Below, in pieces: positions 1 through 23,070 of a stretch of 64,000 bases of DNA (its first letter is position 1; the number at the start of each line of letters is the position of its first letter). Both the position numbers and the translations under genes were made by a program. The notes under the pieces were generated by a model. It was not told the DNA's origin and did not search any database. It saw nothing but the letters and a program-made list of their open reading frames with translations. The DNA lies in the IMG/VR virus record IMGVR_UViG_3300017528_000567, positions 62,001 to 126,000 of that record, one strand, 5' to 3'.

Positions 1-536
1 CCCCCCGGAACCGCGAGGTGATCGATGTTGAAACCAAACTGATCCGAGATGTCTAGGCCGCTGGCGCCCTGCCGCACCAGCAAGAACATCTCTGTCACCG
101 TAACATCACCACTAACGAACAGCTCAACCACGTCCGACATGGACTCCGGGACAGAGCCCTGGAAGTAGATGCGTATCAGGTTGAGAAAAAAGTCCCGGAA
201 CTCTCGGTCACTGAAACCGAGGTCGGGTATCTTGCTGTTGACCAACACCAGGTAGCCGATCACCGACCACAGAAAGTCCGAGCGGGTCCGGTTGAAATCG
301 AAGTCGAACGAGACATCCTCCAAGCCGAGCTCGAGCCGAGCCAACTCGACGGCGACCGCTTTCAGGGCCTGCGTATAGTTTGGCCCCTGCACGGCTGACA
401 CATAGTTCGACGGCAGCAGGTTGAGCAATGTTGTGAAGATCGTCTGGGATCGCTGCATCAAGCGCAGCGAGTATTCCTTGCCCTTCTGCTCGATGGTGCT
501 GTTTAGGCGACCTGGGTCGTAGACAAATCTAGCCAT
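1..536 (-). CDS. Baseplate wedge protein (P2 gpI / T4 gp7-like), partial; runs off the window edge
   Basis: Hand translation from ATG at 536, which overlaps the TGA of the upstream gene (TGATG): MARFVYDPGRLNSTIEQKGKEYSLRLMQRSQTIFTTLLNLLPSNY..., open to position 1. Lies directly downstream of the baseplate J-like gene. Not in the supplied ORF track. Confidence 0.7.
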   Translation of the reverse strand, partial: MARFVYDPGRLNSTIEQKGKEYSLRLMQRSQTIFTTLLNLLPSNYVSAVQGPNYTQALKAVAVELARLELGLEDVSFDFDFNRTRSDFLWSVIGYLVLVNSKIPDLGFSDREFRDFFLNLIRIYFQGSVPESMSDVVELFVSGDVTVTEMFLLVRQGASGLDISDQFGFNIDHLAVPG

Positions 537-3970: not shown

Positions 3971-4021
3971 CAGCCGACCTTTCCTTTCCCCGTGGCATTC
4001 GAAAGTCTACGCATATTGGAT

Positions 4022-8155: not shown

Positions 8156-8338
8156 CTATCCTTGCCCACCGTATTGGAGCTTCTCAAGCTTGCGCATCAG
8201 CCCCTTGATCTCGAGCTCAGTCGCCTTGATCCCCAGCAGGCAGATTTCTTTCACCCGCTCGTTGATAGCGAACTGACGCTTCTGCCACTTGGGCGGCTCC
8301 ACGTCGGGCGGCTCTTTCTTCCCTTGTTCATCACTCAT
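8156..8338 (-). CDS. Small hypothetical protein (60 aa, MSDEQGKKEPP...)
   Basis: ATG at 8338 overlaps the TGA of the 2029-aa gene (ATGA) and fills the gap exactly. Start revised from the track's 8467. Confidence 0.65.
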   Translation of the reverse strand: MSDEQGKKEPPDVEPPKWQKRQFAINERVKEICLLGIKATELEIKGLMRKLEKLQYGGQG

Positions 8339-11300
8339 GTGCCCTCCACTGCCAGTAGCTTGGTCAACTGCTTCAGTATCTCTGCTTGCGCCTTGATCCG
8401 GTTTTTGATCGCCGTGTCTTGCCGGACCAATAGCCCGTCTTCGAGATTGATCCGAGCGTCGACCCACACGTATCGCTTGTCGTAGAGCTGATCGACGTTG
8501 ACCAGAATGTCCTCGATCGCTGTTACGGCGGCGGGGATCTCAGCGAGCCGAGAGTTGACCCGAATCAACCGGGCGCTCAGAGTGGCATCTCGAAGGCTAG
8601 TCGCGTAAGAGTTGGTCGTATCCCCCGCTATCGCGATAGTCGCGACCAGCGTGTTGTAGAACGTTTGGGCCTCCGTGCGTCGGACCTCTATAGCCTTGTA
8701 CAGCGTGTAGATAGTCCGCGCCGACTCACCCGAGATCCCGAACGTAGAGACCAATCGATAAGTCACAGGCCCAGGCGAGGTGAACGGCTCCACAGTCTCC
8801 AGGTGGGTTTCATCCAGCACTTTCTTGATCTGGTAGACCTGCGCGTTGGCCCCGGACTCGATGTAGATCACGTGCTGAGTGGTGACCTTGGAGTGCTCGA
8901 AGGTAGCCGCGCCATCAGTCAACGTGTTCACCGCGACCGTGGCGGCGCGGGGGGATGGAAGCAGAAAATCAGTGAAGGCCATATCGAGGACCTCCAACAG
9001 AGCCGCCTTCTCGTTGACGTACAACGGAATTTCCGCGGCCACGGCGTCCGTCAACGTGGTCTTCATGTCCGTGAGATAGGGAGGTGTGTAGTAGTTTCCG
9101 TATGACGACAAAGAGGCGACCACGCGGTAGCTGGAAGCAGCCGCTGGAGCGACAATGACCGATGTGACCGGTTTATCCAGCTCTAACAGCTGACTATTGA
9201 GTATCGTCTTGACCTGTCTACGCAACCCCTGATTGAGACCCGAAGTAATCACGACAGTCTCGCCCACTTGGACGTTGGCTGTGAAATTCGCGGTGAGGTC
9301 AGAGAGGCGCGTGGTGGTCGGGAAATACCCCTGATTACTGGGGCCAGACTTCGCGGTAGCCGTGGCTATCTCAATGTTGACGAAGCCGACCTGGTACAGC
9401 CACGGGTTGACGCCGGAGATGTTGAGTCCCGTCCCGTCAACCGATATGATGCGCCGAAAAAGTCGAGCTTCGGGGTCGAGAGAATTCGCACCCGAGGTGA
9501 TTCGTACTATATCGAAGACCTGGATCGACGGCACGATTGCGCTAGTGGTGAACTCGATCCTTGTGCTGGAGTGAGAGCCGGCGAAGGTCTCGATCATGGT
9601 CACAAGGACCGGCGGTGAGATGCCATTGGATTCTGTCGTGAGGGACAGTATCCCGTTGATCATCGCGACCTCTGTATCGAGGTACCCCTTGAGCTCGCTG
9701 TTCTGGTCCGGGGTCTGAATCGGAAAGCTCAAATCACCGTCATCATCCTCGATGCCGCCATAGAGAGCAGGGATCCTAGCGGGCGCCGTTTCCTGGTTGG
9801 GGAACGAGACCAGCCCAGAGACCGCCTCACCGGACAGAAGCGGGCTGTTCCCAGCGGCTGAAGCCACATAGGTGATCTGACCCGTCTCGCCCGTGAAGGA
9901 ATAGTCCCTGTTGAGCACGTGGTTGACCAGCTTGTTGACGCCAGTCTGCGAGGTGTCTGCCGGGGATCGGTAGACAGTGCACCCCTTGATGACCGTCACC
10001 GTCAACGGCGTCGTGAAGGTCAACGAAGTGGCGGTAACGCCGCTCCCGGCGATCGTAAGCGGTGCCCCAACGAGCGTCCCATTCGGTTGTTGGATTAGGC
10101 ACAGCATGCCCGGGAGAAACTGAGGGTGCACGTAATCCGCGGACCCATTGGCGTTGTCGACCGCCAGGGTCGTTTCACCGGCGAACGCTTTCTTGGTCAC
10201 CACAGCCCACGCCAGCCGAGTGTGAAGGCCAGAAACGGTCGTGATGTTCTCAGCGCCCGTATCGAGGACCTCGGTTCCTGGGGCTAGCGTAACCAGAGGA
10301 TCGATGGCCGGCACCCCGAAGAAGTTCCGCTGCGTCGGGAAGAATCGGCTCAGATCGCCAGGCGTGTAGTACTTGCGAAAGGTGCCGATCGAAGTCACGG
10401 CAAACGGCGGATATGTCACCTCATATGGCGCGGGCGACACCTTGATCGCATCGTCGATCTGGTTCGTCACTGGCTCCGAAGGCGTCACAACGTGACCCGT
10501 CGTTCCGTCGAACAAAAACGAGCCGTCGTTGTTTCCTACGACAGAGCCATCGAGCCCTGTCTTGTACGCCTCCAGCAGCGTCACCATGTCGTTGTAAAAG
10601 AGCAGCGTGCCCCGGGCGATGACGTCCTGATTGAAGAGATGCCGTTCATCGAAGTACAGCGACTTGCGGCCTTGCTCCCACAGCTTCGGCTGAGACGAGT
10701 TGGACGTTTGCGGTCCCGAGCTCCCACTACTCGCCTGTGTGGCAATCTCGAGCGCGAACTCCGCGCGAAACTGCGTCATGGTCTCGACGCGGTAGTAAAA
10801 CGTATCGGGCGAGCTCAAGGAGTAGTCAGCCAGCAGGATCTGACCAAGCAAGCCGTTGGTCGCTGAGGGCGCGATTTGACACGTGTACGAGGCTTTCAGG
10901 TGTTGCGGCGGGTTGCCGCTCCCGGGGTCCACCGTAGTCAGGCCCGTGTAGATGATCCCGAACTCTTCACCAAGCCCGAGGGGTTCAGCGAAGACGATAT
11001 GACCCGACCCGTTGATTGTGTAGTCCACGGGAGAGTCGAGGACCTGACCGGGCTCTCCCGAGACGCGGCGATACACCACGTAAGGCTCAGTCAGCTTCGG
11101 CACGCGGCTCGTCTGCAGCTCGGTAACTAGCGCCTCGAACACCGGGCGCACGGAACGCAGCAGCAACTGAGGTCCGTAAACATACTGCCGGATCGTGTTG
11201 GCAGACAGCATGACCACGGTGCGGCCCGTGTTGGCCTCGTAGGCAGAGCCGGTCACCTGGAGGAAATCAGTGAAGGTCGCAGCATCATTCGTGAACAGCA

Positions 11301-14300
11301 CCACGGTGCCAGGGCGGTAAAGCAACGACTGGTCCCCGGCGAGCACAAACGTGTTGCTGCCGCGAGCAATGGCCTCGAAGATCTCCGCCCCCGATGCGAA
11401 GTAGCCAGGTACGAAAGTCGTCGCGCTGATCGGCGTTGGGCCAGACGACACAAAGATCCGAGGATCGGTGAACGGGCTCTGAAACACCTGATTGCCAGCG
11501 AGAACAACCGTGGTCTCCTGCTTCACGTCGTCATAGTTAGAATCACCGATCTGGTAGACCTGCTCATTCTCGATGCGCATCAAGTGCCCAGGCGGGAACG
11601 TTTCTTCGTGATCCCCGTGAACCACGAAACTGTTGTTCGGCTCGCCGTCTCCGTCTATCTCGTTGATCGTGACTACCGACGTCAGGATCGGAGGCTGCAA
11701 AACAGTGAACGTCTTCTCGCCGCCAACGGCCTTTGTCACGTAGTAGTCGATATAGACGCGCTCATCCGGTGCAATCGTTGGACCGTGCGGGAGTGCATCC
11801 GTGATCTGCTTGTCCACAAGAAACGTGATCTGAGAGCTTACAGGGTCAACCACGCATTGAACGCCCAGCGCCTGCGGGCGACCGCCGCGAAACACTGCAG
11901 GCGGCGGATTCATCGTCACAGGCAATCCCGCCTTGTTGAAGCTCAGGACGGAAGTCGGCTCCGGGTGCGGCTCGACGATCTCCTTGCGGATCAGAAACGT
12001 TGCGTACTCAGTGATGGGCGGCCCGGGGAGCGTTTGCGGAATCGTAGACGGGGTCGCAACCGTATAGGTGATCCGCGCTTCCTCCCGCTGCAGCATGCGA
12101 TCCCGGAAATGCACGAGTCCGAGCTCGGGCTGTAGCTCGTAGTCTTTGCCGGGGATCTGCTCGATCACCCAGTAGATCGATTTGCCAAGGTCAGCAGACG
12201 CGAAATTCGCTTCGCCGCTCTCCTCACTGAGCTCGACGGTGCCGGCTGGGAGCGAAGCAGGGTCGCTGAATGCAGCGTTGTCGGGCACCAGCACAACCGT
12301 CGCGAAGCCATCGCTCTGAGAGGCACCCAACCGATAGCCCGTGGTTTCCACGTAGGCGGGCGGCACGTTCAAACGCGGGACGTCATTCGAGGCGACCCCC
12401 AATGAGCGAATGCGCTCCACCTTGGTAGAAGGATCGAGCAGCACGGCAGGGGCAAAGTAGCGGTCAGCAAGGACTTCACGGCTATCGTAAATGGCGTACG
12501 TGACGCTCGGCATTGCCGGCGAAACCGCAAGGTCCAGCTCGAGCGAGGTCTCCGGAGTGATGGCTGGATTGGGCGGGTCGGCTGGAACTGGATCAGACAG
12601 CTTCGCGACCGTATACACTGACTCGTTTGCCAGCACCGCCAAGTATCCGGCCTGCACGCCATCCGTTTCAAAGTGCGCACTGGGATCCGTGAGCCGGGTG
12701 CCCGACACTGTGGCCGTCCCCTCGACAACCAACGTGTTCGTTGAAGTGAAGGACACAACGCCAGCCGTCGTATCCACAATCACGTCCTCGCCGATTGTCA
12801 GCTCGTTGTAGTTACCCGTGCCAGGCCCGGTCTCCAACTCGAACTTTAGATTGGTCGACAGCAGCAAAGGGTCCGGCAACACCACGTCCGACGTGAGGCT
12901 CTGGATTGGAACCAACAGGTTTTCTTTGCGCTCGGCAAAGAACAGCAACCCAGCATCGTAGTCGATGTAGAAGCCAAGACCGGAGTCAGGCGGCGGAGAC
13001 ACATTGAGATTGGGGAAGCCGTCCTCTGGGTCGCTGACATAAAACCCCTGCCCCTGTAGCACCTGCACTTTCAACGGGTAGCCTTCGATCGGCAGAGACG
13101 GTAGCGAGACCTGCGGAGACTGAATGATCGGATCAGCCCATGTCGCAGCCTTAACGGTGTAGATCGCCGTGACATCCTTCAGTGGCAGCGCCGCAGCGAG
13201 ATTCACAGGGTTCCGAAGGAACCGGACGGTCATACCGCGCTCGATGGGCAAATCGCCGAAGTAGAGGACCACATTCTGCGTGCCGAACTCGGTCTTGTCT
13301 GCCTCGGAAAACCGAAACTTCCCGTTCGTGGGATCGACCTGGACCTCACCCTTTTTGCCTGAATTGAAGTCCGCTTCGAGCCGATAGATGACGCTTGGAA
13401 AGCGATAGTACGGAGTCGCCCCAGGAAGCGAGAAGATCAGCGATGCGCCGAGTTGCGGCAGATTTGAAATGGTGCCAGGTAGGTTGACAGTTCCACGCGG
13501 CTGGGGCGGCAGCCCTTGCTCGGTCTTGAACAGCACCCCGTCGTAGTAGACGGGCACCCCCGCATGATTAGCGGCGTCGGTCGAGTTGAACAGAAGTCGG
13601 CCCGTGTCTAGCGCCCATTGAACCGTCCCGAGAGGTGGGGCCGTGAAGGCACCCTCATTCGGCTTTTCGACGGTAGTCAAATAGAGGCCGTACCCGAAAC
13701 GCAGCCGCGGGTACTGATTCGGGCCGGGCAAAGGGTTGAGCAACAAGACAGGGTCTGACGGCGCAATGGGTGCGGTGCCCAACTTCCCGGTCGAGTCCTT
13801 GAGCTCGTAGAACTGCTGCTGCTGAAACCGTACGCGCTGCCCCGCGTAGGTTGCCAAATCAGCGGCAGCCCAGTGGAGATTGCCCGTCTCCATCGAGAGT
13901 TGAACGGTGCCAGCGGGCGGGCTGGTGAAGTCCGCGTCATGTGCGACGGGTGCAACGATCTTCTTGACGCCACTCCCTGAAGAGCCAACCGAAAGGCGAT
14001 ACGGGGCGTCGGGCACCTCGTCTGCTTGCACCGGCGGTCGCACGCGTAGGCGCGTAGCGTCCATGTTCGCCTCAGCCGTGAGGATGCCAACCTCGACGGG
14101 TGCTGCCCCTCGTAGCGGCTTGAAGGCCCCTGCTTGCGCGTCGTACGTGAACCTCGCGACAATCTCGTTCTTCGTCCAGCCAAACCGAGCGGACTCAAGC
14201 AGACCGGGGTACGGGCCGGGCGGCAACGGCGGCTCTGCTTGAGGCGGCCCTTCCGAAGTCACCAACACCATGTAGTCAGCACGCGGCGCGGACTCGTCAG

Positions 14301-14424
14301 GCAGGTAGAACGCGTCGAACGCCCCAGGATTCGAGATGAGGTTATCCGGTGACTGCGTGAACGTGGCATTCGACTGCCCTACCCGCATCCCCTCGACAAC
14401 GTAGCCGCTGATCTCAAACGGCAT
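8335..14424 (-). CDS. Very large virion structural protein, baseplate or fibre-associated (2029 aa)
   Basis: Uninterrupted 6.1-kb ORF; beta-rich Pro/Gly/Thr composition with a helical C-terminus; lies between spike and wedge genes and is translationally coupled at both ends. Confidence 0.8.
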   Translation of the reverse strand: MPFEISGYVVEGMRVGQSNATFTQSPDNLISNPGAFDAFYLPDESAPRADYMVLVTSEGPPQAEPPLPPGPYPGLLESARFGWTKNEIVARFTYDAQAGAFKPLRGAAPVEVGILTAEANMDATRLRVRPPVQADEVPDAPYRLSVGSSGSGVKKIVAPVAHDADFTSPPAGTVQLSMETGNLHWAAADLATYAGQRVRFQQQQFYELKDSTGKLGTAPIAPSDPVLLLNPLPGPNQYPRLRFGYGLYLTTVEKPNEGAFTAPPLGTVQWALDTGRLLFNSTDAANHAGVPVYYDGVLFKTEQGLPPQPRGTVNLPGTISNLPQLGASLIFSLPGATPYYRFPSVIYRLEADFNSGKKGEVQVDPTNGKFRFSEADKTEFGTQNVVLYFGDLPIERGMTVRFLRNPVNLAAALPLKDVTAIYTVKAATWADPIIQSPQVSLPSLPIEGYPLKVQVLQGQGFYVSDPEDGFPNLNVSPPPDSGLGFYIDYDAGLLFFAERKENLLVPIQSLTSDVVLPDPLLLSTNLKFELETGPGTGNYNELTIGEDVIVDTTAGVVSFTSTNTLVVEGTATVSGTRLTDPSAHFETDGVQAGYLAVLANESVYTVAKLSDPVPADPPNPAITPETSLELDLAVSPAMPSVTYAIYDSREVLADRYFAPAVLLDPSTKVERIRSLGVASNDVPRLNVPPAYVETTGYRLGASQSDGFATVVLVPDNAAFSDPASLPAGTVELSEESGEANFASADLGKSIYWVIEQIPGKDYELQPELGLVHFRDRMLQREEARITYTVATPSTIPQTLPGPPITEYATFLIRKEIVEPHPEPTSVLSFNKAGLPVTMNPPPAVFRGGRPQALGVQCVVDPVSSQITFLVDKQITDALPHGPTIAPDERVYIDYYVTKAVGGEKTFTVLQPPILTSVVTINEIDGDGEPNNSFVVHGDHEETFPPGHLMRIENEQVYQIGDSNYDDVKQETTVVLAGNQVFQSPFTDPRIFVSSGPTPISATTFVPGYFASGAEIFEAIARGSNTFVLAGDQSLLYRPGTVVLFTNDAATFTDFLQVTGSAYEANTGRTVVMLSANTIRQYVYGPQLLLRSVRPVFEALVTELQTSRVPKLTEPYVVYRRVSGEPGQVLDSPVDYTINGSGHIVFAEPLGLGEEFGIIYTGLTTVDPGSGNPPQHLKASYTCQIAPSATNGLLGQILLADYSLSSPDTFYYRVETMTQFRAEFALEIATQASSGSSGPQTSNSSQPKLWEQGRKSLYFDERHLFNQDVIARGTLLFYNDMVTLLEAYKTGLDGSVVGNNDGSFLFDGTTGHVVTPSEPVTNQIDDAIKVSPAPYEVTYPPFAVTSIGTFRKYYTPGDLSRFFPTQRNFFGVPAIDPLVTLAPGTEVLDTGAENITTVSGLHTRLAWAVVTKKAFAGETTLAVDNANGSADYVHPQFLPGMLCLIQQPNGTLVGAPLTIAGSGVTATSLTFTTPLTVTVIKGCTVYRSPADTSQTGVNKLVNHVLNRDYSFTGETGQITYVASAAGNSPLLSGEAVSGLVSFPNQETAPARIPALYGGIEDDDGDLSFPIQTPDQNSELKGYLDTEVAMINGILSLTTESNGISPPVLVTMIETFAGSHSSTRIEFTTSAIVPSIQVFDIVRITSGANSLDPEARLFRRIISVDGTGLNISGVNPWLYQVGFVNIEIATATAKSGPSNQGYFPTTTRLSDLTANFTANVQVGETVVITSGLNQGLRRQVKTILNSQLLELDKPVTSVIVAPAAASSYRVVASLSSYGNYYTPPYLTDMKTTLTDAVAAEIPLYVNEKAALLEVLDMAFTDFLLPSPRAATVAVNTLTDGAATFEHSKVTTQHVIYIESGANAQVYQIKKVLDETHLETVEPFTSPGPVTYRLVSTFGISGESARTIYTLYKAIEVRRTEAQTFYNTLVATIAIAGDTTNSYATSLRDATLSARLIRVNSRLAEIPAAVTAIEDILVNVDQLYDKRYVWVDARINLEDGLLVRQDTAIKNRIKAQAEILKQLTKLLAVEGT

Positions 14425-15005
14425 CAGAGCACCGTCCCAAGCCCGACGCCGGTACTACCCATGGGCGAAGCGCCGCCCACAATCGGGATCCCAGGTTGGA
14501 TGAATGAAGCAAATGTCATGTCTAGGCCTGTACCGATGGCTCGAGCCATCCTCGTCGGACCGTCCCCGCTCATCCCCGCAGCAGAGAAGCCCGAGATGAT
14601 CGCTGGCACCGCAGTGGGTCCAACGATCCTTGCTACACCTGTGCCCACGCCCACAGACGGGTGATTGGTCTGCAAAAGTGCCAAAGCCGTCCAGCCCATG
14701 GTGAGCCCCGTGGCGAGGCCCAAAATGAATTTGGGTGCCATCATCCCGAGCAGCCCAGAAGACGCCAACCCAGTGGTCAACGAGCTCGACAACAACGGGC
14801 TCGGCACGATCAGAGGAATGAGCCCCGTACCGACCCCCAAAGTGCCCACATCCACCGTCATCACCTTCGATTGGACGGTCAGGAACTGGCACACGCCAAT
14901 CGCGACCCCGAGCGCGAACATCGGGACCCCAGAGCCGATATTCCCCGTGGCGGCCAGATTGGGCGCAATGAACCCAGAGGCTAGCGCTGGAGGGTTGAGC
15001 GCCAT
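14424..15005 (-). CDS. Gly/Ala-rich 193-aa protein with three internal repeats; candidate spike-tip protein
   Basis: ATG at 15005 overlaps the spike gene stop (TGATG). Three ~63-aa repeats end in GVGTG, GVGTG and GVGLG. Confidence 0.7.
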   Translation of the reverse strand: MALNPPALASGFIAPNLAATGNIGSGVPMFALGVAIGVCQFLTVQSKVMTVDVGTLGVGTGLIPLIVPSPLLSSSLTTGLASSGLLGMMAPKFILGLATGLTMGWTALALLQTNHPSVGVGTGVARIVGPTAVPAIISGFSAAGMSGDGPTRMARAIGTGLDMTFASFIQPGIPIVGGASPMGSTGVGLGTVL

Positions 15006-17161
15006 CAGAGCAGCGACCTGAAGGTAGAGGCGCCTTGGAGGGCTAGGCCGGTTATCCAATCCAGGCTCGGGGTGCCAGGGGGCATCATCGGGCTACCTCG
15101 GCAAACACCGAGAGAGGCGGAAGGTCCGCCAACCATGACTTGGGCAGTCGTGAGTGTGATCGAGGTCGGGGCCGTCAAGGTCATGGTGGTCCCCGCCGAA
15201 AGGGACACAGCCAGACCGGCAGTCAGCGAGAAAGCTCCCGCAGCTGCAGAGAGGGTCATGGCGCCAGTGGCAGTTGAGATCGAAATCGCGCCCGTCCCCA
15301 CGGTCAACGTGTACGAGCCCGCAGGCACTAGCGTAGTCATCGAGCCGCCAAGGACGTTGGTCGACCAGTCACCGACCAGCGCCGTCTCAGTCATCCCGCC
15401 GGCAAGGATCGTGGAGGTCTTGCCTCCCGAGACGATCGTCTCCAGCACTTGCTGTGCGTACTGATATTGGCTTTTGCCCGAGCTCAAAACATCGATGCCC
15501 CCCGAGTTTTGCCCGTAGCCGGAGTGCGCGTTGATGCTCAACCGATCGGCCAGCATCGAATAGCCGCCGCTCACAGCGGTGACCTTCGCCCCGTCGACAT
15601 TTTCAATGCTGTCCGACGAGGTCCACGATTGTCGAGCTCCCTGCAGTTGCTCCGAGTACGCCACGTTGTTGTTATCCGGGACCCCCTGAGCCTCCAGCAC
15701 ATACGAAGAGTGCGTGCGGAACTGCAAACCGGCACCCGAGGCACTACCGCGGAAGTCGAAAATAGCCCCGCCCTCCAGGGTCAGATGCAGCGCAATGTTG
15801 TCGGGGGTGCAGGCCCCGATTCGAGCCTTGACAGCGCCTTCGAAGTTGAGCTCTGCCGACACGTTCTTCGTGCCAGTGAAATACTTCTCGACTTTTGACC
15901 CCGGCACATTCAGGAACAGCTTGCCCTGCTTGGACACTGCCATCGCGAACGCGCTGATCGTGTCAGTCGTGCCCGCAGGGTTGGAAGGCGGGCTGATCCG
16001 TAGCAGATAGGCCCCCGCCGTTGTGTAGGACTCCGTGTCATCGAACGGCGAGCGCGCGATCGGCTCAGTTGTAAAGTTTGCTGCGCCCGTGGCCAAGAAG
16101 TCATCGAACAGCTTCGGCCTAAGAAGTTGCCCGTACTGCTGCATCCCTGTGTCACTAGAGAGGTCGTTGCCGACCAGGGTGCCAAGCACCCGCTCGATGT
16201 AGATGGGGCGCCTATCCATCTGAAAGCCGTCGATCTCTTCGCGGACCTCCTGCGTAAGATCGGTCGTATGAGTCATCTCAAGACGATCCTCCGTGTACGG
16301 TTCGGCGCCCGCGCCCTCACTCGGGTCCTCGAAATTGACGGCTGGAAACGTGGCCGGGTAGTGAACCTGGCGCCCGTTCGCAAGAGTCACCGATGGAAAC
16401 TCTTCCTCGTTGTTGAACGTATCGTAGAGCGTCCCCTCGCTCACCGTGTAGCGCCTCACGATGTCCCCGCCGTAATACTTTTGATCAGCCGTTTTCAGTG
16501 TGCTGCCGTCCGCGAGAATATCTGGCGGCAGATAGAACCCCGAGCGGCGGGCCGGACCGGACATGCGAAGCACGCCGGCCTCGCTCTCCACCCTATGCAG
16601 CGCCTGAGCAACAAGCGAGCGCTCCGCATCCCGCAACTCAATGAAGTCACCCGCACGGTTCATCATCCGTACGTCTGACGTAAGGGTGAACTCCGATCCC
16701 GCTGCTGACATCCCGCCGACGTCCCCGGGCTTCAGCTTCAACCTTTTGAAGCGGATCTGCGGCCCTACGACTTTTCGGTAATCGGACGCTTCATCGGCGC
16801 TTACCCCAGCAGGGTCCGAAGGAGCGACGGGGTCAAAGCGTAAGCCGCTCGTTTTGCCGTTAGGGATGAACCCTAGGATCACCGCCTCGTGCAGCTGCTT
16901 GTGCTTGCGCCGATAGCCGATAATCACGAATGAGTTGACCTCTGGGATACCGCCCCAAAAGCTGCGCGGGCCGTACATGGCTTGCGTGAGGTCGATCTCG
17001 AACTGCTCTCCGCCACCCGTCAACACTTTGAGGTCGCACTTCAACTCTACTTCATCAACGCGGGTAACAATCGCCAGCTTGATGCCGTACGGCGCACCCG
17101 TGTCTACAAACTCTGCGCCTGCGACGTACCCGGATGGGTTCTTTGGAAATAGGTCAGACAT
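15005..17161 (-). CDS. Central baseplate spike (gp5 / gpV / VgrG-C-like)
   Basis: N-terminal OB-fold-like segment (AIVTRVDEVELKCDL...GGIPEVNSFVII) and C-terminal short-period beta-helix repeats (YTLTVGTGAISISTATGAMTLSAAAGAFSLTAG); follows the hub gene. Confidence 0.8.
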   Translation of the reverse strand: MSDLFPKNPSGYVAGAEFVDTGAPYGIKLAIVTRVDEVELKCDLKVLTGGGEQFEIDLTQAMYGPRSFWGGIPEVNSFVIIGYRRKHKQLHEAVILGFIPNGKTSGLRFDPVAPSDPAGVSADEASDYRKVVGPQIRFKRLKLKPGDVGGMSAAGSEFTLTSDVRMMNRAGDFIELRDAERSLVAQALHRVESEAGVLRMSGPARRSGFYLPPDILADGSTLKTADQKYYGGDIVRRYTVSEGTLYDTFNNEEEFPSVTLANGRQVHYPATFPAVNFEDPSEGAGAEPYTEDRLEMTHTTDLTQEVREEIDGFQMDRRPIYIERVLGTLVGNDLSSDTGMQQYGQLLRPKLFDDFLATGAANFTTEPIARSPFDDTESYTTAGAYLLRISPPSNPAGTTDTISAFAMAVSKQGKLFLNVPGSKVEKYFTGTKNVSAELNFEGAVKARIGACTPDNIALHLTLEGGAIFDFRGSASGAGLQFRTHSSYVLEAQGVPDNNNVAYSEQLQGARQSWTSSDSIENVDGAKVTAVSGGYSMLADRLSINAHSGYGQNSGGIDVLSSGKSQYQYAQQVLETIVSGGKTSTILAGGMTETALVGDWSTNVLGGSMTTLVPAGSYTLTVGTGAISISTATGAMTLSAAAGAFSLTAGLAVSLSAGTTMTLTAPTSITLTTAQVMVGGPSASLGVCRGSPMMPPGTPSLDWITGLALQGASTFRSLL

Positions 17162-17162
17162 G

Positions 17163-20100
17163 TCACAAGGTCGCTAGCTTGGTTTGGTTATCGAGGAGCT
17201 GCTTTTGCGTCTTCGCAATCTCTTGGCTGAGAGTGTCGATCTGCTTCTGTAAATCCACGCCAATCACAGTCGCCTTCGTATCACGCTGCTTGATAAGCTG
17301 GTCACGTGTCGCAGTCAGTCGGGCGATGCTGGCCTTGTCCTGACTAATCTGCGTCGACAGGTTCCGCTTTGCAGAGTCCCCCCGAAGGTCCTTGCTGAAG
17401 TCACTCCACGCCTTACTGAGATTGTTCACGTTGCTTTCGGCGGATCCGACGGCGGCATTTGCATCGCCGAGCATGAATCGATTGGGCGCAGAGAACGGCG
17501 GCGCCAACTCTGACGGCGGACTCGTACTTGCCGCGTTCGGGCTAACATGCCGTTTGGGGGTCGGCCTGGGCACCAGGTCCGCCGCATCCTGCATCGGCAG
17601 CTTGTCGCCACGAATGGCGCTCTCGAACAGCTGGTGTGCATCATCCAGGGTCGAGTACAGCTTCAGCAAGAAGTCCTCCACCTTGTTTACCACCTCACTG
17701 TTAGTCTTCGTAAAAATCGAGTTCGAGCTCCCAGAATACTGCGCTCGCTGTTCTTCTAACTTGAACTGCGCCTGCGTCTTCTTGGTTTGCAACTCACTCC
17801 AAAGAGTCCAGGCTTCATTGAGCATCTGAGTGACGGCTTCGTCGACCCGACTCTCACTCTGCTGTTGTTCGAGTTCCTTGATGCGTGCATCCACCTTTGC
17901 CAGCTCAGCCTCAAGCTGCACGACCTCCCTTGCGAGCGCCGCCGTGGCCCCGGTCTGTATCGGTCCACCGCGATCAACCAGGGGAGAATTCGCTGGTAGC
18001 GTCGACGAATCTTCCGCAGCGTCGCCCGTGAGTACTTTCACCTGATAGTCAAGGGACATGAATGCCAGGTCAGCCCGCCCCGTGAGACACACACAATCCC
18101 CATCCTGTTGTCGGCCCGCAGCATCTTGCACGGCCATCTCTGCCAAGGTCAGAGCACGTGATAGCTGAGTCGCTTCAACAGATGGCTCGATCCCCCGCTG
18201 CTCTTGAGAGCCCAAAGTCGCGGTTCCCACCCCTTCATCGTCGACCCCGACAAACTCCGGAGCCTTCGTGTTGGGGCTCGACTCTGAGCCCACCATAACC
18301 GCAGCGGTTTGCCCCTCTTCGGGCGTCATCGTGGCCAGGGTAGCGGCGGGATCTGCGTAGCCCGTCGCGATGCTCGTGAGCCCCTGCGATTGAACTGTCA
18401 GCATGCCACTCAGATCGGCGGCTACAGCGAGTTGTACGCCAACCGTCGCCTTGTCCTGGCTGTTGACGATGAGTCGCCCATCTCGCAAGGACACGCCGCG
18501 GCCGTACTGGAAGTGACCGATCAACTCGAACCCACGCTCATCACTCACCGGGCGGATCATAGACATCGGATTCGCCGCAGCCTTGTCTACGGTTGCCGGA
18601 TCGGGCGCCGGGGTCACATGCAGATTCTCTGTGTGCACCATCAAAAGCTGTTTGATCACTTTGCCCGCGTCATGGGCATAGACATAGACACCAGCCGAGT
18701 TGAGCCCGTACTGATACGTATTCGAGAGGTGCTTGCCCTGCAGAACGGCGTTGCGATTGACGGTAAACCGATCGGTTAGCTTGAAATCGTAGACCTCCTG
18801 ACGCTGCCTCGTAATCTCCCGCAACTGCTTGGAGACCTGGGGGTTTGCCAACTGCGCATCCCTCTGGCCGGCATACTTGTGAATATCGGAGGTCGCAAAC
18901 GGCCGTGTGTACGCGAGCACGATATTCGGATAGCCCACGATTCTGCCGGTCTTTGGGTGCCGTAAAATCAGCGGCTCGGCTGGGTTCTCTGCCCCGGACT
19001 TGCCCTCAAAAAGAGCTTGATTCGCCGGCATCTCAAGAGCGTTACCCATCTTGAGCTCGAACACCCCCTTCTCAGACAACTGCTTCGAGGTAAATCGAGC
19101 GGCTTTAGGGGCGCCGTCCTTGCTCGGAGCAGGCGGGTCCACGGGGCTAGTCAGCGTCAAGTCAGCTATGCCCCTAGGCGGGACAAACTTTGACCTTCTA
19201 CTGGTCAGCTGCAGCGACGTAGTGCACCGTCCGCCAAACGCGAAGCTGTGGCTAATTCCAGTGACGTACCAAAGCTGGTCCTTCGGGGCGAGGTAGATAG
19301 GGAACCCCAAGCGGAGCTCGGGGCGCATCGGGATCGTGACGCTACCCCGGTGCCTCTTAGAGTTGATCCGATCCAGCATGTCCAGCCCGTGGAAAAACAT
19401 CTGGGTCGGGTCGGACATGAACTCAGAGTTGTACGGATGAGTTCGCCACCCGTACTTGCGCAACAGGTGAAAATCAGTCACTGACGTGAACGGCGTTGCC
19501 TCATGGGGGATCCCCGGGTCTTGCGTACCGCCGTAGTTACCCTGCATCGTAATCTGAGTGACCACCTCGGACTCAGAGTCGGAGAAATCCCAATCAATGA
19601 TGTCGATGTCCTGAATCCAGGAAGTGGGCTTGTTGCCAAGGACGTCGAGGTTGTAGAAGGGCGGCTTGAAAACGATGTCGCCGGTCACATCCATGTAGAA
19701 CTCAAACCCGATCGCGTCTTTGGCGTCGTTGGCGATCTCCAGTTTCGTCCGGTACTCGGACTGCCAGATGCCCACTCCGATGTTCTGATATACAATTTTG
19801 TACGCAGCGACCTTGTCGCTCGCTGGGTCATAGGACATTTGTCCTGCATCCGGCCCACCGTTAGCGTTACGGACAGCAGTCGACGCCATCGAGCCGGTAA
19901 CGGTGGGTGTCGGCTGCTTCGAGTACTCTTGCCAAAGCGTATCACCACGAACGGCGACCCCAGCCGCCCCGTACAGCACAAGGTTGTTACGCATCTTCGC
20001 AAAGCGCTTCTCCCAGTACAGCGTGATGTCTGTCATGGTGGAGTTGAAGACGTCCTTCTGCGTGCCCTCACGGAGCAGAGCGTTCATCGATCCGGTGGCG

Positions 20101-20675
20101 TTCACGATGTCGCCGAAAGACTGACTCGCAAGCGTGAAAATCATGTCGTAGGGGTTCACTTGCGTAAACACGTTGCCGGTAACGCCCCTCCCCTGTTGCC
20201 CTGAAGGCGCAGCAAAAGCCGCGTTGATGTTGAGCTTGCACAGCTCCCACCACTTCAGAATATCGGCACAGTGGAGGCTGACAGTGTGCTCGCCGCTTGA
20301 GTAACTTTCGGAAACCTCAGTCACGAGCCCCCAGAAGATGGGGTAGTACTGTGGTAAGCCCTCGACCAAGTAGTACCCCTTGGCGTAGATCTCGACCTCC
20401 ATCATCGGCGTGATGATCGGGTTGCCGTCAAAATAGAAGTCGTCGATCGAGTGCCGCGGAATGGACATCGAAACGTTGGCGCTCCCCGGGCAACTATCGA
20501 CGCTCAGATCTGTCTGAATCGCTGTGATGTACTTGTTGAGGTCGAAGCGTTTGGCGCATTGCGGACAGCCCACAACGTCGCCCTCGCCGTTGATGTAGAC
20601 GATGGCATCCGGAGCCGTCGCCACGGTGGGCCGTGCGTTCGGCTGAAATGTCCCTTGAAATGGTCCGCGTGCCAT
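17163..20675 (-). CDS. Baseplate hub protein (gp27 / gpD-like) with long C-terminal extension
   Basis: IFWGLVTEVSESYSSGEHTVSLHCAD, FEFYMDVTGDIVFKPPFY and GSVTIPMRPELRLGFPIY...YVTGISHSF are typical hub segments; C-terminal coiled coils. Confidence 0.8.
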   Translation of the reverse strand: MARGPFQGTFQPNARPTVATAPDAIVYINGEGDVVGCPQCAKRFDLNKYITAIQTDLSVDSCPGSANVSMSIPRHSIDDFYFDGNPIITPMMEVEIYAKGYYLVEGLPQYYPIFWGLVTEVSESYSSGEHTVSLHCADILKWWELCKLNINAAFAAPSGQQGRGVTGNVFTQVNPYDMIFTLASQSFGDIVNATGSMNALLREGTQKDVFNSTMTDITLYWEKRFAKMRNNLVLYGAAGVAVRGDTLWQEYSKQPTPTVTGSMASTAVRNANGGPDAGQMSYDPASDKVAAYKIVYQNIGVGIWQSEYRTKLEIANDAKDAIGFEFYMDVTGDIVFKPPFYNLDVLGNKPTSWIQDIDIIDWDFSDSESEVVTQITMQGNYGGTQDPGIPHEATPFTSVTDFHLLRKYGWRTHPYNSEFMSDPTQMFFHGLDMLDRINSKRHRGSVTIPMRPELRLGFPIYLAPKDQLWYVTGISHSFAFGGRCTTSLQLTSRRSKFVPPRGIADLTLTSPVDPPAPSKDGAPKAARFTSKQLSEKGVFELKMGNALEMPANQALFEGKSGAENPAEPLILRHPKTGRIVGYPNIVLAYTRPFATSDIHKYAGQRDAQLANPQVSKQLREITRQRQEVYDFKLTDRFTVNRNAVLQGKHLSNTYQYGLNSAGVYVYAHDAGKVIKQLLMVHTENLHVTPAPDPATVDKAAANPMSMIRPVSDERGFELIGHFQYGRGVSLRDGRLIVNSQDKATVGVQLAVAADLSGMLTVQSQGLTSIATGYADPAATLATMTPEEGQTAAVMVGSESSPNTKAPEFVGVDDEGVGTATLGSQEQRGIEPSVEATQLSRALTLAEMAVQDAAGRQQDGDCVCLTGRADLAFMSLDYQVKVLTGDAAEDSSTLPANSPLVDRGGPIQTGATAALAREVVQLEAELAKVDARIKELEQQQSESRVDEAVTQMLNEAWTLWSELQTKKTQAQFKLEEQRAQYSGSSNSIFTKTNSEVVNKVEDFLLKLYSTLDDAHQLFESAIRGDKLPMQDAADLVPRPTPKRHVSPNAASTSPPSELAPPFSAPNRFMLGDANAAVGSAESNVNNLSKAWSDFSKDLRGDSAKRNLSTQISQDKASIARLTATRDQLIKQRDTKATVIGVDLQKQIDTLSQEIAKTQKQLLDNQTKLATL

Positions 20676-20684
20676 ATTGTCCGC

Positions 20685-22397
20685 CTAGACGACTGCCGTC
20701 GCACCTTCCGGCAAGGCCCCAGGAGTCCGGCGCTCCGTTGCACCTTCCGGTAACGGCACGTTTGGGTTTGGTTGAGGGTAATCACCACCGGAGAAAGGTG
20801 AGCCGGGAGCTCCAACCGGTTCCGACGGCGGAAGGTTCAAGCCGTATGAGAACGTGTATTGAGGGTCGTCCAAATGGTCGAGCAAGTACCAAGCACGAAC
20901 GGTGAACGAGAAAGTGTACTCAAGTGTGAACGGTGCCCCATCGGATTCTGACAGGTTGAGATTGTCGAAAGAGCCGATGTACAGGATCTCGTCATAGTAC
21001 AGATACACCGAGCCAACCACCGACAGATTCTTGGCTCCCGAAGTCGTAGCCACCAGCGGGTCATCGAACCAGACACCGCCGTTATTCTTGTAGATCAGGA
21101 ACAGCGACAACAGGTTCTGATAGCTAGTCGAGAACTGACGCGCGGTCCGACTCAGACCCATGGCGGCGTGATTGCTGGCGTCCATCGAATAGTACGCCGC
21201 GATCTTGCCCGAGCCCTCGATCTTGTCCTGGTTCTCGCCCCAATGCTCGATGATCGGGCCGTTGCGGCCCCAGTTCCCACTTGAAATGACTTTCTCCGCC
21301 GACACCCGGAAAGACTGTGGGTTCACTAAGAGGCGCAACGGCGGGGTCCTAGCCATCTGTTCCAACTGGTCACGCATCCGCTTGATCGAGCTCTCCTGAG
21401 CCGCCGCAAACGCCTTGCCTAGATTGGTCTGATTGAGGTCCCGGTCAGCCACCTGAGCGATCGTCTTAGTTGCCTTATCTTTGTTGGCGGCCCCTTCCGA
21501 CTTCCACTTGGTTGCTGGCAAAGCTGTGTCGGCGAGCGGGATCGGTAGACCGGCTTGGACTTCAGGGCGAGCGCCCGTCCTAGCCTGTGCCTTGGTAATT
21601 CCCGGGTGATATTCAAAGTGCCCGTAGTCCGCGATCTTCGAGAACGTCCCACCCCAGATCAAGCCGATGCTCTGACCAAGAGCCCCGACAACTCGCCAGT
21701 GTTCTATCCCTTTCGGCCACGTCGGGTCACCCGCCCGCGGATCCGGCCCTGGCGATATCATCGCAACATCAAAGGCAAGGCCGAAGTTGTGCCAAGATTC
21801 TCCACCCTTCGTCCCTGTTACGATGTTGCCGGGAGCCGTACGGCCCTGGGCATACAACCCATCCTGGTACTCAATGCTGCGAAAGCCTTGAACGACAACA
21901 AGATTGATGCCTTGTTGCGCCGCTAGTTCGATGAGCTTTTGAATCAGCGGCTGAATGCTTGGATGCAGCTCATTCGTAAGGGCCGCACTCTTCGCAAACA
22001 CCCCGCGAGCAGGTGTGAAAACAGAGGTGTCCGGGCCAGTCGACACGAAGGCCGGATCATTCACAGCGTTGCCCTGGACCTCCTCGACCTGAGCAGCTGC
22101 TATCACCTCCGCGCTGTCTGTCACCGGTCCATACGAGGCCGACTGCAGAGAAGCCGATCGGTCCAGGACTCTCGCAGTAACGAATGATGGTGGCGGGAGA
22201 ATGCCTACAGCGAAGATCTTTGTCTTTCGCGGGGATAGAGGGGTAACGCTGGTGAGCGGAATGAACTTGCCGTCCATAGGCTCAGTCTCTGTCTCGAGAG
22301 CCTGATAGAACGACAGCATTTGGTAGACGGACGGCTGGTATAGGTCCGCCTGTCGCTCAATTTGCCGGTATACTGGCTCGTCTTTGTTAAAAGCCAT
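20685..22397 (-). CDS. Tube-initiator-like baseplate protein carrying an M15 (L-Ala-D-Glu-type) peptidase domain
   Basis: FRSIEYQDGLYAQGR...ESWHNFGLAFD...WGG...DYGHFEY is the M15 Zn-peptidase signature. The C-terminal LLVNPQS...EHWGE domain is paralogous to 22387..23070. Start moved to ATG 22397 (GGAG RBS). Confidence 0.8.
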   Translation of the reverse strand: MAFNKDEPVYRQIERQADLYQPSVYQMLSFYQALETETEPMDGKFIPLTSVTPLSPRKTKIFAVGILPPPSFVTARVLDRSASLQSASYGPVTDSAEVIAAAQVEEVQGNAVNDPAFVSTGPDTSVFTPARGVFAKSAALTNELHPSIQPLIQKLIELAAQQGINLVVVQGFRSIEYQDGLYAQGRTAPGNIVTGTKGGESWHNFGLAFDVAMISPGPDPRAGDPTWPKGIEHWRVVGALGQSIGLIWGGTFSKIADYGHFEYHPGITKAQARTGARPEVQAGLPIPLADTALPATKWKSEGAANKDKATKTIAQVADRDLNQTNLGKAFAAAQESSIKRMRDQLEQMARTPPLRLLVNPQSFRVSAEKVISSGNWGRNGPIIEHWGENQDKIEGSGKIAAYYSMDASNHAAMGLSRTARQFSTSYQNLLSLFLIYKNNGGVWFDDPLVATTSGAKNLSVVGSVYLYYDEILYIGSFDNLNLSESDGAPFTLEYTFSFTVRAWYLLDHLDDPQYTFSYGLNLPPSEPVGAPGSPFSGGDYPQPNPNVPLPEGATERRTPGALPEGATAVV

Positions 22398-23070
22398 CAG
22401 TAGCTCCCGGGTCCCGGCCCACCGTTCTGTGAGGATCGGCTGGCACAGGCCCACGTCCAGCAACCCCGCGAGCCGCTGGATTGACGCCAAGCCCCGGCAC
22501 CTTCAACAGCTCCTCCTCGACTTTGAACTGCCACGAGATCTTGAACGTAAACGGTTGGTCATCCGTCTCGCTCGTCTCGAAACTGGTGAAGTGCCCAAGG
22601 TAGGTGCCACGGTCAAACATCAGCATGACCTGACCTTGGAGAACGATGTTCCCGTAGGGGTCGAATACACTGCCGTTGCACCTATACAGATCGTGCAAGT
22701 CCCGGTAGCGATCCCACGCGATCGTCTTGTGCCGCAACACCGAGGACAGCCCCGTGTAGAGGTTCATGAAGGCACCGGTGGATCCGTCACCCGAGATATC
22801 AGTGAGGTCATCACCCCAGTGCTGTTCAACGAAGCCGCCCCGCGTCTGCATACGTTCGACCTTCTTTAGGTGATTCTCGGAATAGGAATCCGGGTTCACA
22901 TGCATCACCAGAGCGTGCGGCAGTAGAGCTTTTCGGTTATTGAAAGGACTCGTGAGCTGAAACGCCATCGGGATAAACGAGCGGCGACTATCCAGCCCGT
23001 GTCGATACGCTGGCGCTCCTGGCGCCGCTAGCTTGGTGAAATCCGGGTTTGCTGATGGAATGTGCGGCAT
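22387..23070 (-). CDS. Tail tube initiator / baseplate tube-like protein (gp48 / gp54 / Afp5-like)
   Basis: MHVNPDS...VEQHWGDD...FKISWQFKVE; directly after the tape measure; GAGG RBS. Confidence 0.7.
   Translation of the reverse strand: MPHIPSANPDFTKLAAPGAPAYRHGLDSRRSFIPMAFQLTSPFNNRKALLPHALVMHVNPDSYSENHLKKVERMQTRGGFVEQHWGDDLTDISGDGSTGAFMNLYTGLSSVLRHKTIAWDRYRDLHDLYRCNGSVFDPYGNIVLQGQVMLMFDRGTYLGHFTSFETSETDDQPFTFKISWQFKVEEELLKVPGLGVNPAARGVAGRGPVPADPHRTVGRDPGATDGF

What the first reader, a model, noticed from the sequence alone, without database searches (positions are those of the whole stretch)
14424..15005. Pseudo-three-fold, non-PAAR spike-tip candidate
Seen: the 193-aa protein coupled to the spike gene splits into three ~63-aa repeats, each a helix pair (L.A.G..G...(F/M)..(G/A)+..G+) plus a strand ending GVGTG, GVGTG or GVGLG. 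Known: monomeric PAAR/gp5.4 tips use internal pseudo-3-fold symmetry to cap trimeric spikes. Inference: a hydrophobic tip of a different fold, possibly membrane-penetrating.
Basis: partly seen in the sequence, partly recalled or inferred. Interest (0 to 1): 0.6.

Follow-up and report, generated by a model that had tools for sequence, protein, structure and literature searches.

The report
Triple-repeat, non-PAAR partner of phage spike
A small, very hydrophobic protein encoded right after the tail-spike gene of a huge phage is built from three copies of a unit that other phages encode once beside their spike; it is probably a new kind of cap for the needle that punctures the host cell, but binding to the spike was not tested.

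Summary
Window 14424-15005 (-) encodes a 193-aa protein. Its ATG overlaps the stop of the 718-aa central-spike gene, and its stop overlaps the start of a 2029-aa gene. It has three homologous ~63-aa repeats (profile-profile E 2.5e-8, 2.7e-7, 9e-4), each helix-loop-helix-beta-hairpin ending in GxGxG. AlphaFold2 gives pLDDT 90.5.

It is not PAAR. It has no Pfam hit and no convincing match to a solved structure. No PAAR gene was found in this record or in five related huge-phage records, while T4 and phiKZ controls were found. The spike lacks the HxH apex motif. The family has 334 clusters at 50% identity and lies downstream of the spike gene in 55 of 55 related contigs.

New here: distant members match phrog_5576, a 65-position profile equal to one repeat. 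Single-repeat genes of 59-65 aa lie beside gpV-like spike genes in Campylobacterales prophages. Covariation places equivalent residues of all three repeats together, as on a 3-fold axis.

Best reading (0.5): a pseudo-3-fold cap or axial partner of the trimeric spike, triplicated from a homotrimeric ancestor. Binding and tip position are untested, because the complex predictor was unavailable. Membrane penetration is speculation.

The parts
14424..15005 (-). Gene for the 193-aa triple-repeat protein (P0001); the stop codon is 14424-14426
   Evidence: 86 homologues of 149-193 aa, most of them 186-193 aa. 334 clusters at 50% identity. AF2 pLDDT 90.5.
14823..15005 (-). Repeat 1 (residues 1-61): helix 5-19, helix 27-45, hairpin 47-64, ending GVGTG
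14637..14822 (-). Repeat 2 (residues 62-123): helix 69-82, helix 90-108, hairpin 110-128, ending GVGTG
14427..14636 (-). Repeat 3 (residues 124-193): helix 133-142, helix 148-167, hairpin 170-192, with GVGLG
15005..17161 (-). Central spike gene (718 aa): N-terminal OB fold, C-terminal beta-helix, then a conserved ~45-aa C-terminal module (...GGPxAxLGVxRGxPMMPPGxPSLDWITGLPLxGSAxFRS) without HxH. Its stop overlaps the ATG of the triple-repeat gene.
8335..14424 (-). 2029-aa gene whose ATG overlaps the stop of the triple-repeat gene. It has no family match. It is conserved in position in distant relatives (2011, 2004 and 2203 aa).
17163..20675 (-). 1170-aa gene upstream of the spike gene, conserved in synteny (1244 or 1174 aa in L001/L002). 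Its role was not determined; it may be a hub or baseplate-core protein.
20685..22490 (-). 601-aa protein with an M15 peptidase domain (VanY / Peptidase_M15_4), probably the tail-associated cell-wall lysin
536..3970 (-). Baseplate J-like wedge protein (1144 aa). It shows that the neighbourhood is a contractile-tail baseplate module.
4022..5137 (-). 371-aa protein with a weak baseplate-wedge match (phrog_120, E 4e-4)

Best explanation
The 193-aa protein is a virion component. It sits as one copy on the 3-fold axis of the trimeric central spike, most likely capping the spike's C-terminal (membrane-attacking) end. There it would take the place held by PAAR/gp5.4 in T4 and phiKZ, or by the fused HxH-iron apex in P2 and Mu.

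The proposed anatomy is as follows. Each of the three repeats (helix, loop, helix, Gly-rich beta-hairpin) would meet one of the three spike chains. The three apolar GxGxG hairpins pack around the pseudo-3-fold axis. The six helices lie outside them. The protein arose by triplication of a ~60-aa subunit (phrog_5576). Mu/P2-like prophages still encode that subunit as a single gene next to their gpV-like spike, where it would act as a homotrimer.

Shown: the repeats; the fold class; conserved gene coupling to the spike; absence of PAAR and HxH; homology to the single-repeat family and that family's position beside spikes; covariation between equivalent positions of the three repeats.

Inferred: physical binding to the spike, the distal-tip position, presence in the virion, and any role of the unusually hydrophobic surface in membrane contact.
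For: (1) Gene coupling. Single-base stop/start overlaps join the gene to the spike gene and to the next gene. All 55 IMG/VR loci carrying a family member have a spike homologue upstream on the same strand. In 47 the two genes abut; in the other 8 an ORF is inserted, the spike is split or there is a gap. Gene order is conserved in a 39%-identical relative on a 393-kb contig.

(2) The tip slot is free. PF05488 finds T4 gp5.4 (E 1.8e-10) and phiKZ gp163.1 (E 7e-7). It finds nothing at E<=1 in this record or in five related records, four of them 100% complete. None of 44 spike homologues has HxH in the last 150 residues, and the window spike has none anywhere. PMC12407873 states that spikes without a C-terminal HxH are proposed to carry a separate tip. 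It also documents a non-PAAR tip in RB43, encoded at the same locus.

(3) Symmetry match. There are three homologous repeats. In mean-field DCA, 11 of the top 20 couplings link equivalent positions of different repeats, against 2.9 expected (p 3e-5). The D52-H115-I175 triad ranks 8, 10 and 20 of 17,578 pairs.

(4) A single-repeat version exists. 7 of 45 distant members hit phrog_5576 (65 positions, best E 2.2e-13), on R1, R2 or R3. ORFs of 59-65 aa matching it lie directly after gpV-like spike genes and before the gp25/W gene, with 4-nt overlaps (L068, L069, L074), or directly before the spike gene (L067). hhalign of these ORFs against the repeat profiles gave E 7.5e-6, 8e-4 and 3.6e-6. Those genomes also have no PAAR hit. 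P2 and Mu, whose spikes carry HxH, have no such gene between V and W.

(5) A globular fold rather than a membrane fold. AF2 gave pLDDT 90.5. Polar residues across the family follow an i, i+3, i+7, i+11 stripe on the second helix of each repeat. The hairpins are never polar.
Against: - There is no direct test of binding.
- I had no model coordinates, so 3-D symmetry is inferred from repeats and covariation. Repeat proteins can show covariation at the repeat offset for reasons other than contact.
- The spike has its own conserved ~45-residue C-terminal module after the beta-helix. This could itself be an apex. The small prophage spikes carry Cys or His where P2 has HxH.
- Adjacency downstream of a trimeric fibre or spike gene is also typical of assembly chaperones.
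- No virion proteomics exist, and there is no cultured representative.
- The similarity between the C-terminal modules of the huge-phage spikes and the small prophage spikes is weak (hhalign E 0.003).
Confidence: 0.5

Rival explanations
1. Spike assembly chaperone. The protein, or a trimer of the single-repeat form, templates trimerisation and folding of the spike's C-terminal beta-helix and is then released, so it is not in the virion.
For: Chaperones of trimeric fibres are typically encoded directly downstream of the gene they serve (P2 G after H, seen; established knowledge for lambda Tfa and T4 gp38). Tight translational coupling and 3-fold symmetry suit a trimerisation template as well as a cap. 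The protein diverges faster than the spike: mean identity about 33%, against 50% or more for spike hits.
Against: A GRAVY of 0.89 with only 8 charged residues is unusual for a free cytoplasmic chaperone. Nothing else in these genomes fills the tip role. Length and architecture are conserved across 334 clusters, as is usual for structural parts.
Confidence: 0.18
2. Another axial or central baseplate component. Examples are a plug inside the hub or tube lumen, or a spacer between hub and spike. It would bind the spike complex, but not at the distal tip.
For: The symmetry and coupling evidence says only 'on a 3-fold axis, with the spike'. phiKZ shows that central baseplate regions hold extra small proteins such as a pin and a spacer (PMC13250141). 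The spike's own conserved C-terminal module might already form the apex.
Against: In the characterised systems read here (T4 5/5.4; phiKZ 164/163.1; RB43 204/205), the gene next to the spike gene encodes the tip. Apart from the tip, the hub and spike themselves, the central components listed for phiKZ (tube initiator, spacer, pin) are hexameric rings.
Confidence: 0.15
3. Membrane-active protein. One possibility is an integral membrane protein made in the infected cell, such as a holin or a superinfection-exclusion factor. The other is an ejected protein that refolds into the host membrane to form or seed the DNA channel.
For: GRAVY is 0.89. Two 19-residue windows exceed the Kyte-Doolittle 1.6 threshold (26-44 and 93-111). 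GxxxG-like small-residue motifs are present. The best structural neighbours, though weak, are membrane transporters (Z 5.5).
Against: The homologous helix of repeat 3 is polar (mean KD -0.07). Distant members are polar throughout (up to 34 charged residues, GRAVY -0.21). Polar substitutions follow an amphipathic stripe. AF2 predicts a compact alpha/beta domain with hairpins. The gene lies inside the baseplate operon, not in a lysis cassette. A cap that later inserts into membrane is compatible with the best explanation and is not excluded.
Confidence: 0.12
4. Not a real gene: a chance ORF or a compositional artefact in a GC-rich region.
For: Many spurious ORFs overlap real genes in this 58-62% GC window.
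Against: Hundreds of homologues of conserved length exist, with invariant Gly positions, down to 23% identity. The AF2 model is confident.
Confidence: 0.01

Closest known systems
PAAR-repeat spike tips (T4 gp5.4, phiKZ gp163.1, T6SS PAAR; Pfam PF05488)
   Same: A small protein encoded next to the central spike gene. It is a monomer with internal pseudo-3-fold repeats matched to a trimeric beta-helix. The gene is present where the spike lacks its own HxH apex.
   Different: There is no sequence match to PF05488. The predicted fold is (alpha-alpha-beta-beta)x3 rather than an all-beta cone. It is about twice the size of gp5.4. It has no conserved Zn-type Cys/His cluster. It is far more hydrophobic. 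Binding to the spike is unproven.
Fused apex domain of P2 gpV, Mu gp45 and phi92 gp138 (HxH-iron apex)
   Same: A true homotrimeric cap on the same axis. The single-repeat phrog_5576 proteins would likewise act as three identical copies.
   Different: The apex is part of the spike chain and binds iron through HxH. Here the spike has no HxH, and the candidate cap is a separate gene.
RB43 orf205w, the proposed non-PAAR tip of a T4-like phage (PMC12407873)
   Same: A precedent for a non-PAAR protein, encoded directly after gene 5, occupying the spike tip when gp5.4 is absent.
   Different: It is 690 aa and shows no detectable similarity to this family (hhalign E 0.25). It has no triple repeat.
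phrog_5576 (function unknown): ~60-aa proteins next to gpV-like spikes in Campylobacterales Mu/P2-like prophages
   Same: Homologous to one repeat of this protein. It has the same helix-loop-helix-hairpin layout and the same position beside the spike gene.
   Different: It has a single repeat, so it would need three chains per spike. It is polar and charged rather than hydrophobic. P0001 itself does not reach the phrog_5576 profile at E<=0.01; the link runs through distant family members and profile-profile comparison.
T-even gp38 adhesin on the gp37 fibre tip
   Same: A glycine-rich monomer that caps a trimeric beta-structured fibre and is encoded directly downstream of it. PMC12407873 names it as somewhat similar to the spike-tip interface.
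   Different: It belongs to a different organelle (the long tail fibre) and a different fold. No fold-search list here included it.

Membership tests
PAAR-repeat proteins (PF05488) | Sequence match to the PAAR_motif profile | tested here: not met
   P0001 has no Pfam hit at E<=0.1. No PF05488 match at E<=1 anywhere in the 255-kb record or in five related records. The same search found T4 gp5.4 and phiKZ gp163.1.
PAAR-repeat proteins (PF05488) | All-beta conical fold | tested here: not met
   The AF2 model has six helices and three hairpins. No PAAR chain appears in the Foldseek PDB list or the VIA-align wide list.
PAAR-repeat proteins (PF05488) | Monomer with internal pseudo-3-fold repeats | tested here: met
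   Three homologous repeats. Covariation between equivalent positions. This is a shared design principle, not evidence of homology.
Spike tip proteins of contractile injection systems (functional class) | Gene adjacent to the central spike gene | tested here: met
   Overlapping stop/start. 55 of 55 related loci. T4 and phiKZ show the same arrangement.
Spike tip proteins of contractile injection systems (functional class) | The spike lacks its own HxH apex, and no other tip gene is present | tested here: met
   None of 44 spike homologues has HxH in the last 150 residues, and the window spike has none anywhere. No PAAR gene was found.
Spike tip proteins of contractile injection systems (functional class) | [quoted passage not shown] | not testable with these tools
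There is no cultured phage and no proteomics.
phrog_5576 (single-repeat, spike-adjacent small proteins) | Match to the 65-position profile | tested here: inconclusive
   P0001 itself has no hit at E<=0.01. 7 of 45 family members hit, best E 2.2e-13, each on a single repeat. hhalign of single-repeat ORFs against the R1, R2 and R3 profiles gave E 7.5e-6, 8e-4 and 3.6e-6.
phrog_5576 (single-repeat, spike-adjacent small proteins) | Position next to a gpV-type spike gene | tested here: met
   L068, L069 and L074: spike, then the small gene, then gp25/W. L067: the small gene, then spike.
Holins and other small integral membrane proteins | Transmembrane helices conserved across the family, and a lysis-cassette context | tested here: not met
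   Two windows pass KD 1.6 in P0001, but the homologous third helix scores -0.07. Distant members are polar. The context is the baseplate operon. No dedicated TM predictor was available.
P2 gpV / Mu gp45-type self-capped spikes (asked of the upstream spike) | C-terminal HxH iron-binding motif | tested here: not met
   P2 gpV has HTHKH and Mu gp45 has HIH near the C-terminus. The window spike and the four small prophage spikes have none.

The most novel reading that the evidence does not exclude
Contractile tails would have a third, so far undescribed way to finish the central spike, besides the PAAR cone and the fused HxH-iron apex. This would be a helix-helix-hairpin module supplied either as three ~60-aa chains (phrog_5576, in Mu/P2-like prophages) or as one triplicated 190-aa chain (a large clade of 250-660-kb phages). 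The family would then record a homotrimer-to-pseudotrimer gene triplication. In the huge phages its nearly uncharged surface might make the cap lipid-seeking rather than merely sharp.
Probability: 0.4. Interest if true: 0.75.

Novelty: new variant of a known kind. Interest (0 to 1): 0.62.

Why it matters
Spike tips decide whether a contractile tail can breach a given cell envelope. T4 gp5.4 is needed for fitness and for infecting hosts with truncated LPS (PMC12407873). Tips are also the point where engineered injection systems are loaded and retargeted.

If this reading is right, an unannotated family becomes the tip or axial partner of the spike in a whole clade of uncultured huge phages, and its single-repeat form plays the same part in small prophages. 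The family has no Pfam entry, its PHROG has no assigned function, and no solved structure resembles it.

It would also be a clear example of symmetry matching through gene triplication. The idea is directly testable by co-expressing the protein with the spike's beta-helix fragment, the approach that solved gp5-gp5.4.

Tried and rejected
There is no verdict either way.
- The AF2 model of the full spike monomer was poor (pLDDT 51), as expected for an intertwined trimer. Only the OB domain and part of the beta-helix gave usable structural matches.
- Search for a natural spike-tip fusion. The ~800-aa spike variants (P0186) carry an internal insertion, not the repeat domain. The 295-aa P0278 has an N-terminal extension unrelated to the spike, probably a mis-called start.
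- RB43 orf205w, whose first 220 residues are a helix/strand mix, shows no similarity.
- Cultured phages: tblastn with P0001 found nothing. The spike found only one uncultured 485-kb record. P0344 and P0358 found only two Helicobacter prophage records.
- Word search with the 64-aa single-repeat protein returned only the query itself. The search for related loci with the single-repeat alignment failed because no stretch was conserved enough. The spread of the single-repeat form outside Campylobacterales is therefore unknown.
- PDB profile searches with the family alignments found nothing meaningful. Foldseek against PDB gave none at E<=0.001. VIA-align wide gave a best Z of 5.5, to Na+/H+ antiporters, which is within noise for helical models.
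- The C-terminal modules of the huge-phage spikes and the small prophage spikes align at the very C-terminus (ITGLP..GS), but only at hhalign E 0.003 and probability 10%. I treat this as a hint only.
- No model coordinates were available in the Python box, so 3-D symmetry, burial and surface hydrophobicity could not be measured directly.
Full report
**What is there**

Window 14424-15005 (minus strand) encodes a 193-aa protein, P0001. Its ATG shares a base with the TGA of the upstream 718-aa gene (15005-17161). Its TGA shares a base with the ATG of a 2029-aa gene (8335-14424). All three genes are therefore translationally coupled.

The window is positions 62001-126000 of a 255-kb IMG/VR virus record that CheckV rates 54% complete. 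The neighbourhood is a contractile-tail baseplate module. It includes a Baseplate_J protein at 536-3970, a weak wedge match at 4022-5137, an M15-peptidase protein at 20685-22490, and a weak tube-initiator match at 22387-23070.

**The upstream gene is a central spike**

The evidence is individually weak but consistent.
- Sub-threshold sequence hits go to DUF2345, a beta-helical trimerisation domain, phrog_694 (hub/tail lysozyme C-terminus) and PDB Gp5 chains.
- In the otherwise poor monomer model (pLDDT 51), residues 19-104 form an OB fold. It matches P2 gpV, the R2 pyocin spike, and the AFP, PVC, Pa193 and A-1(L) baseplate spikes at Z 6.0-6.7.
- Residues 499-603 superpose on the T4 gp5 beta-helix (Z 5.8, rmsd 2.0 A over 93 residues).
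- The spike family is large, with more than 381 hits on contigs up to 660 kb.
- The family ends in a strongly conserved ~45-residue module after the beta-helix. None of 44 members has an HxH motif in its last 150 residues, and the window spike has none anywhere.

- The protein is 17% Gly, has only 8 charged residues, and has GRAVY 0.89.
- The three segments 1-61, 62-123 and 124-193 are homologous. The single sequence gives R1-R2 z 9.5 against shuffles, with weaker values for R3.
- On slices of the 44-member family alignment, hhalign gives E 2.5e-8 (R1-R2), 2.7e-7 (R2-R3) and 9e-4 (R1-R3).
- Across 130 representatives at 23-61% identity, the same motif appears three times: [L/F]xxxGxxGxxxPxLAx[G/A]xAxG, then GxGxG.
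- AlphaFold2 with the family alignment gives pLDDT 90.5 and pTM 0.82, with helix-helix-strand-strand repeated three times.

**What it is not**

- There is no Pfam, PHROG or NCBIfam hit for P0001.
- The PDB sequence-profile searches found nothing.
- Foldseek against PDB found nothing at E<=0.001.
- VIA-align against 48,161 chains gave a best Z of 5.5, to antiporters, which is within noise.
- It is not PAAR by sequence or by fold.
- Structural neighbours exist only among unannotated viral proteins. One BFVD entry matches at E 8e-4. Three ESM Atlas viral clusters match at TM 0.82, 0.53 and 0.52.

**The family**

- The word search found 86 homologues of 149-193 aa, most of them 186-193 aa. All are metagenomic, on contigs up to 530 kb.
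- The exhaustive profile search found 334 clusters at 50% identity with E<=1e-3. Apart from evident fragments they are stand-alone, full-length proteins of 181-202 aa.
- In 55 of 55 IMG/VR loci a spike homologue lies upstream on the same strand. In 47 the two genes abut. In the other 8 an ORF is inserted, the spike is split or there is a gap. The inserts look like an endonuclease-VII/HNH-type homing endonuclease or a Dam-type methylase.
- Gene order over ten genes is kept in a 39%-identical relative on a 393-kb contig.

**Is the tip position free?**

- The PF05488 search detects T4 gp5.4 (E 1.8e-10) and phiKZ gp163.1 (E 7e-7).
- It finds nothing at E<=1 in this record or in five related records of 393-529 kb, four of them rated 100% complete.
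- According to PMC12407873, spikes without a C-terminal HxH are proposed to carry a separate tip.
- The same paper shows that RB43, which lacks gp5.4, carries a different, larger tip probably encoded by the gene right after gene 5. That protein is unrelated to this one. It is still a precedent for non-PAAR tips encoded at this locus.
- In phiKZ the tip gene also directly follows the spike gene.

**A single-repeat relative**

- Seven of 45 distant family members match phrog_5576 (best E 2.2e-13). This is a profile of only 65 positions with no assigned function. The matches fall on repeat 1, 2 or 3 in different proteins. phrog_5576 therefore corresponds to one repeat.
- A 64-aa protein of a Helicobacter prophage matches it and lies 9 nt upstream of a 'baseplate assembly protein' gene (phrog_9992).
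- Searching 301 Campylobacterales genomes found 8 with matches, most of them in open frames of 63-89 aa.
- In L068, L069 and L074 the order is gpV-like spike, then the 59-62-aa gene, then gp25/W, then J, with 4-nt overlaps. In L067 the small gene directly precedes the spike gene.
- Pfam confirms Phage_base_V plus Gp5_C for the L074 spike and GPW_gp25 for the gene after the small one.
- An alignment of these small proteins matches the repeat profiles at E 7.5e-6, 8e-4 and 3.6e-6.
- The small prophage spikes also lack HxH, and their genomes have no PAAR hit.
- P2 gpV and Mu gp45 carry HxH and have W directly after V.
- The small prophage spikes and the huge-phage spikes end in a similar motif (...ITGLP..GS...), but the alignment is weak (E 0.003).

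**Evidence for a closed 3-fold arrangement**

I had no model coordinates, so I ran mean-field DCA on 211 family members (effective number 184).
- Eleven of the top 20 couplings, and 20 of the top 50, link equivalent positions of different repeats. The expected numbers are 2.9 and 7.3 (p 3e-5 and 1e-5). Most of these pairs lie in the strands.
- The three pairs of the D52-H115-I175 triad rank 8, 10 and 20 of 17,578. This is what residues around a pseudo-3-fold axis would show.
- The caveat is that repeats can co-vary at the repeat offset without being in contact.

**Membrane protein or globular domain?**

- Two 19-residue windows pass the Kyte-Doolittle threshold. They are the second helices of repeats 1 and 2. 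The homologous helix of repeat 3 scores -0.07.
- Distant members are polar, with up to 34 charged residues and GRAVY down to -0.21.
- Polar substitutions follow an i, i+3, i+7, i+11 stripe on each second helix. The hairpins are never polar.
- This fits a globular domain with a buried hairpin core and one exposed helical face. In the window's subfamily that face is largely apolar in repeats 1 and 2.
- The family median GRAVY of 0.8 is still unusual for a soluble protein. It suggests that the surface is covered by partners or meets lipid.

**Interpretation**

- The best-supported reading (about 0.5) is a single-copy, pseudo-3-fold partner of the trimeric spike. It most likely caps the C-terminal end and derives by triplication from a homotrimeric ~60-aa ancestor.
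- Rivals are a spike-trimerisation chaperone (0.18), another axial baseplate component (0.15) and a membrane-active protein (0.12). A cap that later inserts into membrane overlaps with the best reading.
- The decisive test, a multimer prediction or co-purification with the spike C-terminus, could not be run.

**Verdict**

'Non-PAAR, pseudo-3-fold, spike-coupled' stands and is strengthened. 'Tip' is likely but unproven. 'Membrane-penetrating' is conjecture.
- Novelty: a new variant of a known kind, namely a spike tip or partner of a new fold and family.

Noticed in passing
window 42466-43488 (-): A 340-aa protein with a full-length, strong match to Pfam PF25216 'Volactin' (E 3.2e-72, 244 bits). 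This is an actin-fold protein encoded by the huge phage.
   Followed up: no
window 8335-14424 (-): The 2029-aa protein translationally coupled to the triple-repeat gene has no Pfam or NCBIfam match, and PHROGs was not searched for it. It is conserved in size and position in distant relatives (2011, 2004 and 2203 aa in L001-L003).
   Followed up: partly
L006:3510-4010, L015:3456-3947, L036:3633-4001, L028:~3244-3985; L022:2824-3591: In some relatives an extra ORF lies between the spike and triple-repeat genes. It is 122-166 aa in L006, L015/L016 and L036, and carries an endonuclease-VII/HNH-like motif (CPIT...SLDRIDP..GY..GN.AVISH), so it is probably a homing endonuclease. L028 shows the same motif but no single clean ORF. 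In L022 the insert is a 255-aa ORF that looks like a Dam-type methyltransferase. These are judged by eye, because no family search was left.
   Followed up: partly
L003:7506-8708 and 8717-9934; L007:1846-3051 and 3048-4001: In two relatives the spike is encoded as two consecutive ORFs (400 + 405 aa in L003). The second ORF in L003 carries the conserved C-terminal module. This could be a split gene, a frameshift or an assembly error.
   Followed up: no
window 20685-22490 (-) and 22387-23070 (-): A 601-aa protein carries an M15 peptidase domain (VanY / Peptidase_M15_4) inside the tail module and is probably the tail lysin. As listed from the first start codon, it overlaps the end of the 227-aa tube-initiator-like gene by about 100 nt, so its true start is probably further downstream.
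   Followed up: no
window 31064-34414 (-); 47398-48273 (-); 50511-51476 (-): A 1116-aa UvrD-type helicase with a ~290-residue N-terminal extension, a galactosyltransferase-like protein (phrog_1721), and an HNH/homing-endonuclease-like protein.
   Followed up: no
L074:860-1492, L069:956-1498, L067:1702-2181, L068:1683-1994: The small gpV-like spikes beside the single-repeat genes carry Cys, or Cys and His, where P2 and Mu have HxH (for example ECFCAITGLPHPDGS). This may be a different metal site or a docking motif.
   Followed up: partly
The genome search control set: phrog_5576 also matched the Caulobacter vibrioides control genome at E<=0.01. The place was not shown.
   Followed up: no
G000 (whole record): IMG/VR classes this 255-kb record, and a related 529-kb record, as 'provirus'. 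Three related records have direct terminal repeats. The host is unknown.
   Followed up: no
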